DNA of 63,752 nt, filler included, from Polymyxa betae A26-41 (GCA_003693705.1; 6 parts of 6 records of this genome joined end to end with filler, not necessarily neighbours in it), one strand, 5' to 3'; counted from the first letter of the whole stretch, positions 5,379 through 42,447 are shown. The notes: generated from the sequence alone by a model not told the origin. Made by a program: numbers and translations.

Positions 5379-7260
5379 CGTTAAGACGACCAGGGGGTCG
5401 GAAGACCAGTTACAAAGAGAGACGAAATTGAGACGAAATAGACACGTGTTCAGAGAGAGACAAAGAACTCTAGTTGTATTATTAGAAAGGAGAAGCGGTT
5501 GCGGTGTCCGCAGAGAGGTTAGGGGGAACCTCATATATCAGTAGCAGAATAAACAATTAAAAAGTAAAAATAAAAACTTCGCGTCACATCGCCCTCTTCA
5601 TTTGAGTTAGACCGAGTCAGAACAGGAGCAGGAAGGAATAAGAAGATGGCATAGATCCAGGGTTGTCAAGTTGGGACAGCATGAGCACAATCATCATGAA
5701 CAGGAAAGAACACTTCAGGAACAGAACAGGAGAAAACGAATAGTAGGATTTAAGTATCGGACAGGACACAATCGATGAGGTTAGACGTCGAGCAGAGAGA
5801 GTAACTCAGGGGGACAAAATTCTGCATGCCGGAGACGGCGCTTGATGAAGACGGGACAGTCCTTCAGAAGTTGCGAAAGCGGCTCCCAGGTATTTTCTGC
5901 AGATTCAAAGCCAGACCACGAGATGAAAATTTCCCAATCATTAATTTGGGAATTGAAACGAACATTTCTAATATCCTCAATCTCAAAGCCATAACCATCA
6001 TGACCAAATTGTTTTAAAATCTCCTCAGTAACATTTAATTGAGAATCAGAAGACGAAGACGAGAACAATGACAATCAAAAAGTCTCTCAGACAATAAATC
6101 TCTAACAGTGAAAACATAATCAGATTTGACGGAAACGATTTGAAAAGGTCCAGACCAACGAACTTGTAACTTATTTCGATTAACTTTCAATGCATTCGAA
6201 ACCAAAACATAGTCACCGATAGAAAAGTTAGGCAGGACTGCCTTACGACGACGATTAGCAGCAGTACGTCGCGACGACCGAGATTCATCAACATCTTTAT
6301 GCCATTGAAGAAGCGATGCTTGCAAGTCAGATACAAGCTCTTGTAATTGAAGAGGCGTCGACGGCACAGGAATAACAGCTTTCGTTCGAGGATTGTAGAC
6401 GGCATCAAGCGGAGAGGAAGGAGGTAAACCCATAAACAGGGTAACAGCACCAGGTCGATCAGGGGGAGTAGAATGGCTCAAAGCAAAACGGATCAGAGGA
6501 ACAAGAATAGGCCAGTCAACCAAGTCAAGGCGAAATTCAGAAATTAAAGAGCAAAATACATGCAAAATATGACGATTAATGACCTCAATAGTGCCATTAG
6601 ACCAAGGACAGTAAGCAAGAGTGAAATGATGATTAATGTGCAATTTTAAACATAATTCTTCAATAAGAGAGTTTAGAAAGTGAGAACCACGATCAGAAAC
6701 AAAGATAGAAGGGATGCCATATCGGGTGATCCAATCAATCAAACATTCAGCGGCAAAAGACGCAGTAGGATTTAAGCAAGGAAATAATTCAACAAAAGAT
6801 GATAAATCGTCACGAACAACGAAAAGGTATTTAAATTGCTTCTTACGAGATAGATCGATTTGTAGATAATCGAAGTGAAGCACTGAGTTGCGAACAACAG
6901 CATGGGTAGCCGGGCCAAAGGGACGTGGAACAACTTCTCCTCCTCGATTTACAGTGCAGTGCAGACACTGTTTATAAAAAGAGGATACATCTTCGGCAAG
7001 TCCACTCCAGTAAAAGCGTTCCTGAATAGAAGATAAAGTAGCTTTGATGCCTCGATGTCCAGAAAGGCCACAATGTGAAACCACCAAAAATGCGAAACTT
7101 TAATTCGAAAGCATCAGGAGGAATGAAAACAATACGAGATTGAGTTAAATAAACCTCATTTTCAACCATAAAATCGGAACGAAGATGATCATTAATAGAA
7201 AAATAATTAGACTGAATGGAAGAAATTCCAATCATCGAATCAAATTCTCCGTTTTCAAAT
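5379..7260 (-). mobile_element. 3' fragment of a chromoviral Ty3/Gypsy LTR retrotransposon (integrase, chromodomain, PPT, 3' LTR)
   Basis: HHCC (H..GHRG..CLHC), rve core (HFDY, SDRGSHF, SNGTIE), KLQVRWSGPF, chromodomain (FEIEDI..ISWSGFESAENTWEP) after a frameshift; PPT GAAGAGGGCGA at 5599-5589 followed by TGTGACG at 5588; far LTR end near 5379 is approximate. Confidence 0.9.
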
Positions 7261-36169: not shown

Positions 36170-37830
36170 CGATTCCCTTCCTGATACTGAGTCTCTCAGA
36201 AAGCTTGGCTACATTCAGCTCTGATGTTCCAGTCTCTCTGGATGAGACTCATGTTGGCGCCTCTCCTCTCGACCTTCACGTTACAGACACCAGAGTAACA
36301 TTGCTCTGTCAGAAAAACGTCACATTTCTCTAACATGCATTATAGGAAACGACTCTCTACGATTCATACTCAATCTCTGATCTTTCTGATTTTAACAACT
36401 TCAAAGATTCTGCCTATGATTTTAATATAGATTTTAATGTATGAAATGATTATATAGCTGTGATGGTATACAATTCATTTTTTCTTCAGATATTCAATGA
36501 GAATGAAAGCCATGAAGCATTGGACACTCCACACGATATTGGAACATTCTCAACATCTTTTTTTTACATCATGCAGATTCCTCATCATCTTTATTCCATG
36601 ATACAGATTCCTCAACATCATTTTTATATCATACAGATTCTGTTACTGATTTACCTCCTATTCAGGAAACAATCAATGTAATGTTTCAATATCAAGTATC
36701 ATATCTTAGAAATCGCTAAAACTTTCAAAAGCAGATTGATGGAAATAGTCCTAAAGAGATTCATGTCACTGTCTCTGCTCTCGACCTCCATCATACAGAG
36801 TTCGAAGTATGATTGATCTGTAAGCAAGAAATCGCGTTTCTCTAACATGCGTTATAGGCACTGATCCCCTCTAATTCATATTCAATTGAAAATAACTCGG
36901 AAGTTCCCTATTTCAACAACCTCTTTGATACCTCATATAACCTGGATGTAGATTTTAGTGTATCAAAAAATTCTATAACTGTTATAATATGAAATTGATT
37001 TTTTTTATTCAGATATTCGATGGGAATGAAATTTGTGAAATGCTGGCCACTACACCTGATATTGAAACAACACCAACATCTTTATTACACCATACAGATA
37101 ATGTTACAGATATACCTCCTATTCAGGAAACTATTCATGTAATGTTTCATTAGCAAGTTAAAGCTGGCTGACATTCTCATCATCAGATTGATGGACATAG
37201 TCAGATCACAGACTATCTTAATGAGACTCATGTTACTGTCTCTCCTCTAGACTTCCACGTTACAGACACCAGAGTAACATTGTCAGAAAGAAGTCCCGTC
37301 TTTCTAACATGCATTATAGGAACCGATTCTCTATAATTCATATTCAACCTCTGATCGGTCCGATTTCAACAACTTCATAGATTCTACATTTGATTTTAAC
37401 CTTGATGTTGGTTATAATGTATGAAATGATTATATAACTGTGTTGGTATAAAATTCATTTTTTTTTTAGATATTCAATGAGAATGAAATCCATGAAACAT
37501 CGGACATTCCTGTTGGAGTGTTCGGAACATTCTAGTGGAGTAAGATGGCCGCACCCCGCTCCAGTGGAAACATGCGTGGAACATTCTGTGGACTTTATAT
37601 GTGCGACAAACATATTGAATAAATCAGAGTAGCTATACACACCGAGTGTGAGATTGTGTTGTTTGAGTTTATCGCATCCATCGTCTAGGACTTCGCACCC
37701 AGCATCCCAACAATTCCACCTCATGTTGGAACTTGATCAACATCTTTATTACATCATACAAATAGTGTTACAGATTTACCTCAGGAAACTATCAATGTAA
37801 TGTTTCATCATCAAATCTCACATCTTCAAA
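36170..37830 (+). repeat. Three diverged ~500-bp tandem units, each carrying the same exon/intron pattern
   Basis: GAGACTCATGTT..GTAACA..CTAACATGCATTATAG recurs near 36243, 36756 and 37223, followed by GTAT..TTTTTTCAG and TCAGGAAAC..GTAATG. Confidence 0.8.
37511..37712. mobile_element. Solo LTR (202 bp)
   Basis: TGTTGG...CCAACA termini; 5-bp TSD ATTCC (37506-37510, 37713-37717); absent from the two sister repeat units. Confidence 0.9.
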
Positions 37831-40401
37831 ATCTCTGAGCTATTCGTACTCAGAATGATGAACCAGTTGAACCGATATCCCGGAAACGTCTTCGTATTGA
37901 CGAGACATCATCGCCAACCTACCTTCCGTATTCCATCAATTATGATGTGACTGATATCCATGACTATAACAGTCTCTGCGAATTTCTTATGAGTTTACGG
38001 ACCCTTTGTCTTGCAGTTATATTGACTATAGAGTAGATTAAAGAGCCGAATGAAGAGGAACTTCTTTATCTGTCTTCAAAGTCCGATAATGATGCAGATC
38101 GATACTCCAAGATCAACCGTCCTTTAATTATCAATGTGAAAGGACATGAACTGGATTTGAGTGAAATCCAAAAATTCCAATATGCTCAAAGCACTACAGA
38201 ATCTGATTCTGATTGCGAATCTGTATCGGAAATTGATGTTGGGCTGCCGGATAATTGGAGGGGTTTGGAGGAAGTCTGATGGGAAACCGCGCAAATGGGT
38301 CTATTTATGTCGTACTGTACTCCGATGTGTCATACAATGCTGCCAGAAAGATCTTCGCATGTTTCAGGTATCTGGGGGAATCGCTTCAGTCATCGGGAAC
38401 TGTCGAAAGAATGTTCCGGAGTTGAATGCCGATCTAAGATGTTCACAACCCATCAGACGGTCCGAGATAGTTCTATCGACCCTCCTGCTCTACAGAGGAA
38501 CAAAAATCCGTCCGTAAAACGGATGAAATTTAGTTCACCATCAAAGGGTTTCGTTCTGCCAAAGAAAATAGCGATCTGCCTGAATTTTTGAAATTGTTTG
38601 ATTTTGGGGTGGAGAAGACACGGACTACACCACTCTGTGTGCTTTTCTGGTGAGATTTATTCATATTGAATGCGGAATCTCACCTGAGCTGTAATTCAGA
38701 GAAAGTAGCCTGATGATGACGAGTACGCGTTTCTCACAGAAAAAAGCATCTTGATCCCAACGGATGGTAACATAACAGGTGAAAGAGACCCCATTATTAT
38801 CAAAGTTCTCGATGAGCAGCTCATATTGACCGAACTCTCGCAACTCTCATCGTCGACGACCACGTTACAGAAGCTGATATTGGTGGCCAGTTTATGTCTC
38901 AAATTGATTCGGGCCAAGATTACCGACCCGAAAGTGGACCTGAGACGTGATGGCTGGTGGCTTTGGCAATGGCGAACATGTTTCCCATTACTTTCATGTG
39001 TTCGAATATGCTGACAGAATGATCTTCGGATTTTTCAATCTCGATGGGGAAATCCGATTCGGCATACTGTTTTTCGGATGCTTTGCTCTTTGAACGAAGG
39101 CGGGAGTAAACAGTGCGGATTTGAGACGCTCATTGTCAGTAACAATAGGAGATATTCCATCAAATCACAGCTTGTGTCGGATCGAAAAGGCGTTGTTCAT
39201 TGTCTATTGAGATATTCTCTGAAAGGAATTGAGACGGTACTACTGTGTTCAAGTTGATTTGTGTTTTCTGAATATATCACAGAAGATCATTTTGGAGTGT
39301 CTTCGGCTAATGAATAATTACCTGAAGAAGCAGAAATTGGATTCATCATCTTTTCTGAGTGAATATCTCCGAGATACTCTAAATCTATTATTATTCTGTC
39401 TTGAGCATCATTGCAATAATGATGCCAATTATTTCTCTCATATATTCGGAAATTATATAGATCATTATCAATTTAAACAGAATTATTGTCCTGGACATAC
39501 TGGACAATATCCTGCTCAATCTGCAATATATGCTAACTTGAGTACTTAAATCAGTAAAAAAGAATCAATTTGACTCCGTTATACAAGTGCGTAATGCTCC
39601 CTAATTTTCTATCATAAAACGACTCACCAAACAATACCAAGATTCCAATTTGTACTGTTTCTGCAATAGCGAATTTTTCCAGATGCAAATGCGGATTCGC
39701 TAAGGGGTCCTCCGGATCTCCTTCAACAACTTCAAATTTGCTTTAATAAATTCTGTCAATAGTTGATAGATGGACACTCTATCGGTGTCCAAACAAAACA
39801 GCAGATTTCTGACTGCAAAATGGCGTCACACTAAATCCTTGGAATTCTTTAAGCCTCGTCTTCATTTGAATGAATTTGGGAGAGAACGCTGGAGTGCTGC
39901 GTGCCAGTTGGGGCGCCATTGGGGCCGAGTCAATTCGGAGATTGAAGCAGAGAGGAAGTCGCTTGAGCCGCGAATGTGAGACCTGTAACTATACAGTGAA
40001 GCGACATCATAAGAGCTGTTATCATGGAAGAAGAATGAGAGATGAGAAGTCGAGGCAATGAGACAAAAAGTGAAGAAATTGGAATTTGCTGGACTCGATG
40101 AGAAAGATTCTCGGGAATGGGACCAATAGCAGATGCGATCGCACCCGATCAGGGTGACATGCTAGCCCTGGCGATCGCGGGGCCGTTTCCGGAAGCAAGG
40201 AATAATCGGGAGAGAATGGAGTCGTTGTCATAGGAGCGGCGCTGGACATCAGGCAGCTGTGGAAGCCATCGAAGAGCACCGATTCGAGCGGTAATACAGG
40301 CTCAGAATTCTAAACAAAATCTCCAAAAAACTTCCAAGTTTAAATATGTGGAACCAAATAATAGATGGGGAGCCACTGAGACACTTAGTATATATGAGAA
40401 A

Positions 40402-42447
40402 TTATTGAATGAAACGATCTTCGAATTGCTGCAAAGGGAAATACATCGCGGTAACTGGACGTCCGTTAAAGGCTCTTGTCTTTAAAGTCTGGCGGGCATT
40501 AATGCCATCCGAAACGTTCACGAAGCAAACCAAGACTTTGCTAACCCCTGGAGGATCGTACTCTTTCCCTTCTTTACTTGGCTTGGGAATCCAAACCTGA
40601 AGAACATAAAAATACAACGACACACCAACAAATCTAGCTTTAGACAGCACAATGCCATAAAAAACAAAGCAAATAAGAAAAGTTACATACATCTGCAACA
40701 GGGCCGTATTTCCGGCATTCAGCACGAACATCCAGCGTGATGTCCTCGTATTCTGCAAACGACGGTTAGTTACGAGGATGAAATATCAAAGAGGCTCCAA
40801 AAATGATTTTACAGTATTAGGCTCAAAACATAAAAGCAGATAACCCGGAAAAAAATCAAACCTTCGTCATCTAGAAGCTCGTCGCGTGTGCACAGATTGC
40901 TCAATATCACAACATTGGACACCTCTGTATCACTGCCTTCCTTCAGGATAGGAGTAGCTAATGTGCTAGCTCGGAGACGCCCAGTGCAATCTTCTGGTGC
41001 GGGTGGAAGACCTAGACAATAAAAATCAATCCGGAGTGAAGGCATAGAGCAAGACTGAAATTGTCGAAACATAAATCAGGGACCCTTTTGTCTACACAAG
41101 TAAACAAGCGATTCTGGTCGCATCTTAGATGGACCAATTCGAATCACATTCGTTGCGCAAGGATGTTATCATCATTTCAAATGAAAAGAAAATGAGAAAC
41201 AGACATACCCGCTATATCCATGACGAACGTTTCCAAATGGGGCAGGACAGGAGTATAATCGGCAGGGCGGCCAACACGCAAGGTTCGGCCACCGAGTTGA
41301 AGCCCATCCCATCGATCAATGCACCGCGTCGCATCGGAAACCGACCGCATCTGTGTTCAGCATTATGGACCAATTTCAACAATGAGATCTTAAGCATCCC
41401 ACCTCTACAAACTGTTTCAGATGAGTCAGTAAACGCATAGTTCCTATTCAACCGAAAATTATATCCAGCTTAAGAGCGCAAAAACGAGTCAAAGCCAAAC
41501 GTCTGGCAAAAACCTCCAAGAGGCAAATAGCAGCATCTAACTCGAAAGGAAGACCATAAGGAGATAACAGATAGGAAAAAACATATGGTGATGACTAAAA
41601 GGAAACCGAAGAACAAACAAAGAGCTCAAAAGCAAAAGTAAACGAGCGAAATGTAAAATAAAGCAAAGCACAATCAAAGTTGTAGCTTACACAGAACGAG
41701 CCATCCGAACTTGTCCAGACAGAGACGACTGGATGAGGAGTTGTAATACCGCCTAAAACCAGAAATCAGAATAAGAAAAGCGATTTGACAGAACATGCGA
41801 AAGTTAATTAAATCAGATATCCCATAATCTACATACAGAACCATTAGGCTATAAAGCATAATCCATAAAAATGGCTCAAAGATAGAACTCAGAGGGTTCT
41901 ATTCGTTGCGCAAGGATGTTCTCATCATAGAAAAATAAAAAAAAAAAGCGAAACTGAGCATTACAGTTTGTTGCGGCGTTGGTGAAGAAACTGATGAGAG
42001 CCGACTCTGAATATGTCGACGCCAGCGGCATGTTGCCAACATAGATTCTACGAGCTTGTTTAGTAACCTATAACAAAGACAATATCAGTAAATTTGAAAC
42101 ACACTAAACATTCGCAAGGCAAAAATAGCAAACAACAGCAAAAGATTGCAATTGGCTGGCTAAAACGTAATGGCAAAACTCAACAAAAAGTTAAAACGCC
42201 ATACCTGAGGGTTAGTCCCGATTTGTTGCTGTGAAAGCAGTTGTTTGATAAGGTCAGAGTTGGGCTTGGTAGGGGAGCGACCACGTCGCTCTCGGCTGGG
42301 CGAATTGCGTGACCTCGACCTCGAGCGGGACCCCGGCGAGTCATTACCAGACACATGACGACGGCGCCGACGATCCCTGGACCTCGAGCGGGAGCGCCGC
42401 CGGGGCGAGCGGGATCGCGACCGCGACCGACGCCGAGAGGATGGCAT
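40402..42447 (-). CDS. U2AF large subunit (U2AF65)-like splicing factor: RS domain, one RRM, UHM
   Basis: Exons 42447-42205, 42067-41965, 41752-41691, 41411-41403, 41350-41209, 41011-40862, ~40752-40691, ~40596-40402; RS tract, QARRIYVGN, FC|FVE|MRS, LRVGRPADY, ELLDDEEYEDITLDVRAECRKYG, RAFNGRPV. Confidence 0.9.
41076..41175 (-). ncRNA. Intronic box C/D snoRNA candidate with U6-antisense guide (copy B)
   Basis: Box C ATGATGA 41175-41169; guide CATCCTTGCGCA 41165-41154; D' ACGA; internal hairpin; C'-like GTGTAGA; 11 nt; box D CTGA 41079-41076; ~63 nt upstream of the 3' splice site. Confidence 0.8.
41813..41928 (-). ncRNA. Intronic box C/D snoRNA candidate with U6-antisense guide (copy A)
   Basis: Box C ATGATGA 41928-41922; guide CATCCTTGCGCA 41918-41907; D' ACGA; hairpin ATAGAAC/GTTCTAT; C'-like ATGTAGA; 11 nt; box D CTGA 41816-41813; ~60 nt upstream of the 3' splice site. 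Confidence 0.8.

What the first reader, a model, noticed from the sequence alone, without database searches (positions are those of the whole stretch)
41076..41928. Two paralogous intronic box C/D snoRNAs in a splicing-factor gene, both antisense to the U6 internal stem-loop
Seen: introns 2 and 5 share ATGATGA-N-AACATCCTTGCGCA-ACGAAT, then unrelated hairpins, then RTGTAGA, 11 nt and CTGA, each ending ~60 nt before the 3' splice site. Only boxes and guide are conserved, which suggests selection. Known: U6 contains UGCGCAAGGAUG (nt 64-75, human numbering), the exact complement of CATCCTTGCGCA, and C/D guides methylate the base paired 5 nt upstream of D/D'. Inference: with ACGA as D' the target is C68 in the ISL loop, which is not among the vertebrate U6 methylations I recall (Am70 lies in the same duplex). 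A GGG before box D in both copies might pair with U6 CCC61-63. This suggests an undescribed link between expression of a U2AF-like factor and modification or chaperoning of U6.
Basis: partly seen in the sequence, partly recalled or inferred. Interest (0 to 1): 0.85.

Follow-up and report, generated by a model that had tools for sequence, protein, structure and literature searches.

The report
Paired intronic U6-targeting C/D snoRNAs
Two introns of a U2AF65-like splicing-factor gene in a relative of the clubroot parasite each carry a small nucleolar RNA gene whose guide matches the catalytic stem-loop of U6 spliceosomal RNA; they are real, but they belong to a kind already seen in plants (SnoR26) and mammals (SNORD23).

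Summary
Introns 2 and 5 of a minus-strand RS–RRM1–UHM (U2AF65-like) gene each hold a box C/D snoRNA-like unit: 41928–41813 and 41175–41076. Each has ATGATGA, a 12-nt U6-antisense element, ACGA as D', a stable unrelated hairpin, RTGTAGA as C', 11 nt, then CTGA, and ends 60 and 64 nt before the 3' splice site.

A related metagenome contig keeps copy B in the orthologous intron. There the C box, guide and D' match at 29 of 30 positions, against 82% in the flanking exon and about 40% in the spacer.

A metagenome scan found the same C-box/guide/NNGA design in other eukaryote-like contigs, with a cleaner CAGA D'. Some of these hit Rfam SNORD23 (E 3.5e-6, below the gathering score). SNORD23 is the mammalian "orphan" since caught in chimeric reads with U6.

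The D'+5 rule puts the target at U6 C68 in the ISL loop. By my numbering this equals Arabidopsis U6 Cm63, a RiboMeth-seq site assigned to SnoR26.

So this is a new member of a known kind, not an undescribed link. The Plasmodiophora brassicae ortholog lacks both host introns. Expression, this organism's own U6 and its rRNAs could not be checked.

The parts
41813..41928 (-). snoRNA copy A, in intron 2; 116 nt from box C to box D
   Evidence: Sequence. Found by covariance model R1, which was built without any window sequence (25.6 bits, E 3.8e-6). Best Rfam family in a local scan is SNORD23 (16.9 bits, not significant).
41922..41928 (-). Copy A box C, ATGATGA
41907..41918 (-). Copy A D' guide, CATCCTTGCGCA; complement of U6 nt 64-75 (human numbering)
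   Evidence: A perfect 12-bp duplex has about -19 kcal/mol, computed on the register-shifted 12-mer 41153-41164.
41903..41906 (-). Copy A D' box, ACGA; the only GA-containing tetramer in the conserved block
   Evidence: It aligns with CAGA in L003/L010.
41837..41900 (-). Copy A internal hairpin between D' and C' (closing stem AGAACC/GGTTCT)
   Evidence: z = -3.8
41828..41834 (-). Copy A C' box, ATGTAGA (degenerate)
41817..41827 (-). Copy A 11-nt stretch upstream of box D, TTATGGGATAT; not conserved between copies
41813..41816 (-). Copy A box D, CTGA
41076..41175 (-). snoRNA copy B, in intron 5; 100 nt from box C to box D
   Evidence: Sequence. R1 hit of 17 bits, E 1.4e-3. Ortholog present in L001.
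41169..41175 (-). Copy B box C, ATGATGA
41154..41165 (-). Copy B D' guide, CATCCTTGCGCA
   Evidence: The C box + guide + D' block is 29/30 identical to L001.
41150..41153 (-). Copy B D' box, ACGA
41108..41147 (-). Copy B internal hairpin (closing stem GTGATTC/GAATCGC)
   Evidence: z = -4.0. L001 has a GGGATT/AATCCC stem at the same place, with changes on both sides of one pair.
41091..41097 (-). Copy B C' box, GTGTAGA
   Evidence: The 10-nt window TGTAGACAAA (41087-41096), which overlaps this box, is 9/10 conserved in L001.
41080..41090 (-). Copy B 11-nt stretch upstream of box D, CAAAAGGGTCC
   Evidence: Only 6/11 conserved in L001
41076..41079 (-). Copy B box D, CTGA
40402..42447 (-). Host gene for a U2AF65-like protein (RS domain, RRM1, UHM; no RRM2). 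Exons: 42447-42205, 42067-41965, 41752-41691, 41411-41403, 41350-41209, 41011-40862, 40752-40691, 40596-40402.
   Evidence: Exon translations, each checked separately against the P. brassicae ortholog. P0002 matches U2AF65 RRM1 and UHM structures and Pfam RRM_1.

Best explanation
These are two redundant box C/D snoRNA genes. Each is most likely released from its intron (2 or 5) of a U2AF65-like gene when the pre-mRNA is spliced (inferred). Each would assemble into a fibrillarin snoRNP (inferred). The 12-nt guide next to the internal D' box (ACGA) pairs with the loop and 3' strand of the U6 internal stem-loop, nt 64-75 in human numbering. That pairing requires the stem-loop to be opened (inferred). 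The fifth-nucleotide rule places 2'-O-methylation on the loop cytidine equivalent to human C68, which by my numbering is Arabidopsis Cm63 (inferred). A hairpin between D' and C' brings the internal boxes together (shown by folding). The 11 nt upstream of box D is not conserved and is probably not a second guide. At most it adds a few pairs with the C-run of the other ISL strand. The design matches plant SnoR26 in predicted target and mammalian SNORD23 in antisense element.
For: The box order, spacing and exact 20-mer are shared by two otherwise unrelated introns. In the orthologous intron of a related species (L001), the C box + guide + D' are 29/30 identical and the C'-box window is 9/10 identical. 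The flanking exon is 82% identical, the spacer about 40% and the intron flanks 40-58%. Hairpins sit at the same place with different sequences in every lineage. The same C box + CATCCTTGCGCA + NNGA design, with a terminal stem and a clean CAGA D', occurs in eukaryote-like metagenome contigs. The L003 type hits Rfam SNORD23 at E 3.5e-6. A model built only from those contigs finds both window copies and nothing else in the piece. SNORD23-U6 chimeric reads have been reported twice. Arabidopsis U6 carries Cm63, assigned to SnoR26, alongside Cm57 and Am65, which correspond to human C62 and A70. An offset of 5 therefore makes Cm63 equal to C68; that step is my inference. The D-box ends lie 60 and 64 nt from the 3' splice sites, in line with splicing-coupled snoRNP assembly (established knowledge).
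Against: This organism's U6 and rRNAs could not be obtained, so the target rests on the near-universal conservation of the U6 ISL. No terminal C/D stem is better than chance. D' (ACGA) and C' (UGUAGA) are degenerate. Neither copy reaches any Rfam gathering score. Methylation of C68 is not known in vertebrates. For mouse Snord23 the authors argue for Am70, and an earlier study predicted Um64. I could not see the SnoR26 sequence, so the equivalence with the plant guide rests on target position only.
Confidence: 0.6

Rival explanations
1. They are real U6-binding C/D snoRNAs, but C68 methylation is not the outcome. Either they direct methylation of the neighbouring A70-equivalent, as proposed for mouse Snord23, or they act mainly as a chaperone that opens or holds the ISL before U4/U6 annealing.
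For: Mouse chimeric eCLIP places Snord23 at U6-Am70, which has a high RiboMeth score. A 2023 preprint lists the human Am70 guide as still missing. Arabidopsis Am65 (= A70) has no assigned guide. New snoRNA-target contacts often show low methylation, which suggests methylation-independent roles. All lineages carry a short U6-like or G-rich motif between C' and D that could pair with the other ISL strand (note).
Against: To reach A70, the D' box would have to be CAAC here and CACA in L003/L010. Neither has the GA needed for a K-turn, and neither is conserved. ACGA/CAGA is conserved as NNGA and sits flush with the duplex. Arabidopsis does methylate the C68-equivalent.
Confidence: 0.22
2. They are real C/D snoRNAs whose true target is not U6 but an rRNA or another RNA with similar sequence.
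For: Most C/D snoRNAs target rRNA, and this organism's rRNAs could not be screened here.
Against: A perfect 12-nt match to a 107-nt RNA is very unlikely by chance (about 1e-5 by my estimate). The identical guide recurs in unrelated lineages whose relative SNORD23 is physically linked to U6. From my recollection, unchecked, the most similar conserved rRNA stretch is the 18S 3' end, which has two mismatches.
Confidence: 0.08
3. They are not functional snoRNAs. They could be decaying snoRNA-derived copies, or intronic cis-elements that affect splicing of the host pre-mRNA, for example by titrating U6.
For: There is no expression evidence and no convincing terminal stem, the internal boxes are degenerate, and the host is itself a splicing factor.
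Against: Conservation across species is higher in the boxes and guide than in the adjoining exon, and the hairpin is maintained by compensating changes. The same architecture occurs in unrelated host contexts. In L010 an open frame lies between the two copies, though I did not identify it.
Confidence: 0.07

Closest known systems
Arabidopsis thaliana SnoR26, the assigned guide of U6 Cm63 (Wu et al. 2021, PMC8053127)
   Same: The predicted target is the same: the fourth nucleotide of the ISL pentaloop. Arabidopsis C63 equals human C68, using the offset of 5 implied by C57/C62 and A65/A70 (my inference). Both are box C/D guides for U6.
   Different: I could not obtain the SnoR26 sequence, so shared ancestry, which box carries the guide, and the length of pairing are all unknown. 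No plant family appeared in the Rfam scans of the window copies. Whether Rfam holds a SnoR26 model I do not know. The organism here is a rhizarian, not a plant, and the genes are intronic in a protein-coding gene.
SNORD23 / HBII-115 (Rfam RF00603), a mammalian 'orphan' C/D snoRNA
   Same: The 5' part is the same: UGAUGA, about 3 nt, then CAUCCUUGC antisense to the U6 ISL. SNORD23 is the best-scoring Rfam family for copy A. Intermediate metagenome sequences link the two: they hit SNORD23 at E 3.5e-6, and a model built from them finds the window copies. SNORD23-U6 chimeras have been observed.
   Different: The window copies do not reach the family threshold (16.9 bits against a gathering score of 64). 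They are AT-rich and lack the terminal stem. They also lack the ~45-nt GC-rich segment between C' and D and the G-run before box D. They have a longer perfect guide (12 nt against 9 in the mammalian consensus) and a recognisable D' box. The human host gene is GLTSCR2, not a U2AF-like gene. The identical guide could be convergent, because the U6 target is invariant.
Classical U6-specific methylation guides (mgU6-47, mgU6-53, mgU6-77, MBII-166)
   Same: They are intron-encoded box C/D RNAs that direct 2'-O-methylation of U6 in the nucleolus. From memory, mgU6-53 also has two paralogs in introns of one host gene.
   Different: They target other U6 positions (A47, A53, C77, C60). None pairs with the ISL loop.

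Membership tests
Box C/D snoRNA (generic) | Box C (RUGAUGA) near the 5' end and box D (CUGA) near the 3' end | tested here: met
   ATGATGA and CTGA in both copies, 116 and 100 nt apart. Both are conserved in L001.
Box C/D snoRNA (generic) | Short terminal stem pairing the flanks of C and D | tested here: inconclusive
   Duplex energies of the 12-nt flanks are no better than shuffles. Copy B has 4 adjacent pairs including one G-U, and copy A has none. L003/L010 relatives have clear 4-5 bp stems.
Box C/D snoRNA (generic) | Internal D' and C' boxes, with the guide ending next to D' | tested here: met
   ACGA (NNGA) sits flush with the 12-nt antisense element. (A/G)UGUAGA follows the hairpin. These align with CAGA and AUGUAGA in relatives. 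Both boxes are degenerate.
Box C/D snoRNA (generic) | At least 10 bp of complementarity to a stable RNA, with the target paired to the 5th nt upstream of D/D' | tested here: inconclusive
   There is a 12-nt perfect complement to the canonical U6 ISL sequence, which is established knowledge consistent. This organism's own U6 and rRNAs were not available.
Box C/D snoRNA (generic) | A stable small RNA bound by fibrillarin/Nop56/Nop58/Snu13 | not testable with these tools
SNORD23 (Rfam RF00603) | Score at or above the Rfam gathering threshold (64 bits) | tested here: not met
   No hit in the 13.5-kb scan. Copy A scores 16.9 bits in a local scan, and copy B has no hit. The L003-type relatives score 32-41 bits.
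SNORD23 (Rfam RF00603) | Antisense element to the U6 ISL directly downstream of box C | tested here: met
   CAUCCUUGC is shared with the family consensus.
Plant SnoR26 (U6 Cm63 guide) | Predicted methylation of the U6 C68-equivalent (At C63) | tested here: met
   The D'+5 rule with ACGA gives the C paired to the guide G five positions upstream, which is C68. Arabidopsis Cm63 is assigned to SnoR26. The numbering equivalence is my inference.
Plant SnoR26 (U6 Cm63 guide) | Sequence or structure homology to SnoR26 | not tested
   The SnoR26 sequence is not in the held supplements and no other paper held it.

The most novel reading that the evidence does not exclude
The window copies, the metagenome relatives, mammalian SNORD23 and perhaps plant SnoR26 could be one ancient, pan-eukaryotic U6-ISL guide family. 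Its ancestral, canonical D' box would aim at loop C68, and mammalian SNORD23 would be a degenerate descendant, which would explain the U64/A70 dispute. The short U6-like or G-rich motif between C' and D would then clamp the displaced 5' strand (C60-C63), making the snoRNP a two-handed ISL opener as well as a methylase.
Probability: 0.2. Interest if true: 0.6.

Novelty: new member of a known kind. Interest (0 to 1): 0.4.

Why it matters
U6 forms the catalytic centre of the spliceosome, and its ISL binds a catalytic metal. How and why the ISL is 2'-O-methylated is under active study (LARP7, THUMPD2).

These rhizarian genes and the metagenome relatives show the SNORD23-type antisense element next to a readable D' box. 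That gives a clear, testable prediction, Cm68, as in Arabidopsis. It bears on the unresolved question of what mammalian SNORD23 does (Um64, Am70 or no methylation).

It also adds snoRNA annotation for Phytomyxea, a group with almost none. The host-gene link to splicing is probably incidental.

Tried and rejected
- **Rfam:** scans of the whole piece and of each copy reached no gathering score. The weak snoR1, mir-1175 and snoR35 hits are chance.
- **Pfam on single exons:** nothing, because the pieces are too short.
- **Copy A ortholog:** a protein search with the exon-2 ORF found no candidate, so copy A has no ortholog evidence.
- **P. brassicae:** the ortholog locus (L015) has no intron 2 or 5 and no U6-antisense motif. 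Its one model hit is a different C/D-like RNA.
- **Metagenome hits discarded:** L002, L004/L006/L009/L014, L005 and L012 look like bacterial coding sequence and were treated as chance.
- **Taxon of L010:** an Atlas search with an L010 ORF gave nothing.
- **Literature:** searches for Cm68 and for fly-style 'MeU6' names gave nothing useful. The SnoR26 sequence was not in the held supplements.
- **Second guide rejected:** the 11 nt before box D is not conserved among copy A, copy B and L001.
- **A70 rejected as canonical target:** it would need a D' box without GA.
- **Spliced model:** I never joined the host-gene exons. They were translated and searched one at a time by reference, and the joined-protein search was left out.

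Full report
**What is there**

The gene lies on the minus strand. I translated the exons one at a time and never joined them. The joined-protein search was left out.

The exons are 42447-42205, 42067-41965, 41752-41691, a 9-nt micro-exon at 41411-41403, 41350-41209, 41011-40862, 40752-40691 and 40596-40402. Each exon matches, in order, one gene on contig CDSF01000165.1 of assembly GCA_001049375.1. Papers that cite that accession give it as Plasmodiophora brassicae (lineage).

That ortholog is protein P0002. It matches solved U2AF65 RRM1 over residues 33-141 (E about 1e-19) and the U2AF65 UHM over residues 176-268 (E about 1e-15). Only about 35 residues lie between them, so there is no RRM2. 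Exon 1 of the window gene encodes an RS-rich tail.

**The observation**

Intron 2 (41964-41753) and intron 5 (41208-41012) each contain, in order:
- ATGATGA;
- one base, then AA;
- CATCCTTGCGCA;
- ACGA, then AT;
- a hairpin;
- (A/G)TGTAGA;
- 11 nt;
- CTGA.

The shared 20-mer occurs exactly twice in the window, with none expected by chance. Outside the boxes and guide the two copies do not align. The spacers fold into hairpins far more stable than shuffles (z = -3.8 and -4.0). The D boxes end 60 and 64 nt before the 3' splice sites.

**Evidence of selection**

The ORF that covers exon 5 found a single relative, at 82% identity over the ORF, on a 638-nt ENA metagenome contig, L001. L001 carries the orthologous exon followed by an intron holding the same snoRNA. 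Identity to the window along that alignment is as follows:

| Segment | Identity |
|---|---|
| Exon 5 | 116/142 (82%) |
| 5' intron flank | 19/33 |
| C box + guide + D' | 29/30 |
| Internal spacer | 17/43, plus gaps |
| C'-box window (TGTAGACAAA) | 9/10 |
| 11 nt before box D | 6/11 |
| D box | 4/4 |
| 3' flank | 10/25 |

L001 also has a hairpin at the same place, with a different stem sequence (GGGATT/AATCCC against GTGATTC/GAATCGC). That includes one pair changed on both sides. This is the pattern expected of a functional C/D snoRNA with one functional guide.

**Relatives elsewhere**

I scanned metagenome contigs for TGATGA-N3-CATCCTTGCGCA-NNGA. The scan returned bacterial-looking chance hits plus two eukaryote-like types:
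- **L003 type:** L003, L007, L008, L011 and L013.
- **L010 type:** two copies 1.8 kb apart on L010.

Both types have a 4-5 bp terminal stem, the same guide flush against a clean CAGA D' box, a hairpin, an (A)UGUAGA or UGCAGA C' box, a longer 3' segment and a G-run before CUGA. The L003 type hits Rfam SNORD23 at 32-41 bits (E down to 3.5e-6), below the gathering score of 64.

A covariance model built only from these seven sequences finds both window copies and nothing else significant in the piece: 25.6 bits (E 3.8e-6) and 17 bits (E 1.4e-3). Scanned alone, copy A has SNORD23 as its best Rfam family, but only at 16.9 bits and only over the C box and guide. Formal SNORD23 membership is therefore not met. 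The U6 target is invariant, so convergence on the same guide cannot be excluded.

**What is known**

SNORD23 (HBII-115, hosted in GLTSCR2) was long listed as an orphan. Two later studies changed that:
- CLIP chimeras linked it to U6 with a predicted Um64, which was not observed.
- Chimeric eCLIP in mouse again found Snord23-U6 and argued for Am70.

RiboMeth-seq of Arabidopsis U6 found Nm at U27, A43, A48, C57, C63, A65, G75 and G84, with C63 assigned to SnoR26 and A65 unassigned. Human U6 is methylated at C62 and A70. Within the conserved ISL, only an offset of 5 places C57, C63 and A65 on a C, a C and an A respectively. Arabidopsis Cm63 is therefore the C68-equivalent. That step is my inference.

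I found no paper naming Cm68 in any snRNA.

**Mechanism**

The conserved block contains only one tetramer with the GA needed for a K-turn or K-loop. It is ACGA here and CAGA in the relatives, and it abuts the last guide base. Counting five positions upstream gives the guide G that pairs with C68, the fourth base of the G65-A69 loop. The loop limits follow the U64-A70 closing pair.

Reaching A70 would need CAAC or CACA as D', which is neither box-like nor conserved. I therefore favour Cm68 (confidence about 0.6). A role at A70 or a chaperone role gets about 0.2.

Pairing over nt 64-75 requires the ISL to be open. The guide in effect replaces the ISL 5' strand. UGCGCA is self-complementary, so the guide contains the same hexamer as U6 itself.

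The stretch between C' and D is not conserved as a guide. In every lineage, though, it holds a short AAGG(G/A)U, GAUG or G-run motif. That motif could pair either with the snoRNA's own guide or with U6 C60-C63. Extra pairing near methylation sites is reported as common in Arabidopsis. I did not test this statistically, and L001 lacks the GGG.

**Limits**

- No expression data could be obtained.
- The organism's U6 and rRNAs could not be fetched.
- The terminal stems are not better than chance.
- Copy A has no ortholog evidence.
- The P. brassicae ortholog keeps only the two introns around the micro-exon and has no such snoRNA nearby. The snoRNA-host association is therefore lineage-specific and probably incidental.

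**Verdict**

This is a real and well-conserved pair of intronic U6-ISL box C/D snoRNA genes, and a new member of a known kind: plant SnoR26 by predicted target and mammalian SNORD23 by antisense element. Interest is moderate. Its value is the clean D' box, which makes a sharp prediction about which ISL nucleotide this guide family modifies.

Noticed in passing
window 36200-37900: Three diverged direct repeat units about 460-520 nt apart, plus a 30-nt tandem array at 36549-36640. The weak Rfam snoR35 hit (36527-36606, 19 bits) falls inside the array and is probably spurious.
   Followed up: partly
window 40402-42447 (-) and L015:6001-6969: The U2AF65-like host protein has an RS tail, RRM1 and UHM but no RRM2, both here and in P. 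brassicae. Whether it is the organism's only U2AF large subunit is unknown. Exon 8 found only two relatives among 1.84 billion representatives.
   Followed up: partly
L015:6001-6969: The P. brassicae ortholog has lost introns 1, 2, 5, 6 and 7 relative to the window gene. It keeps only the two introns that flank a micro-exon.
   Followed up: yes
L015:7778-7877 (-): An unrelated C/D snoRNA-like element lies just downstream of the P. brassicae host-gene ortholog. It reads AUGAGGA ... CAGA ... AUGUAGA ... CUGA with a CCCC/GGGG terminal stem and a different guide.
   Followed up: no
L010:5741-5861 (-) and L010:7587-7707 (-): In this unidentified eukaryote-like contig, two near-identical copies of the U6-ISL guide snoRNA lie 1.8 kb apart, with an open frame (6039-6329, -) between them. 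This would echo the two-copies-in-one-host arrangement of the window, but I did not identify the frame as an exon.
   Followed up: partly
window 41817-41827, 41080-41090; L001:598-608; L003, L010: Between C' and D, every family member holds a short motif resembling the U6 3' ISL strand (GGGAU, AAGGGU, GAUG, AAGGG) or a G-run next to box D. The motif can pair with the snoRNA's own guide or with U6 C60-C63. I did not test this against chance.
   Followed up: no
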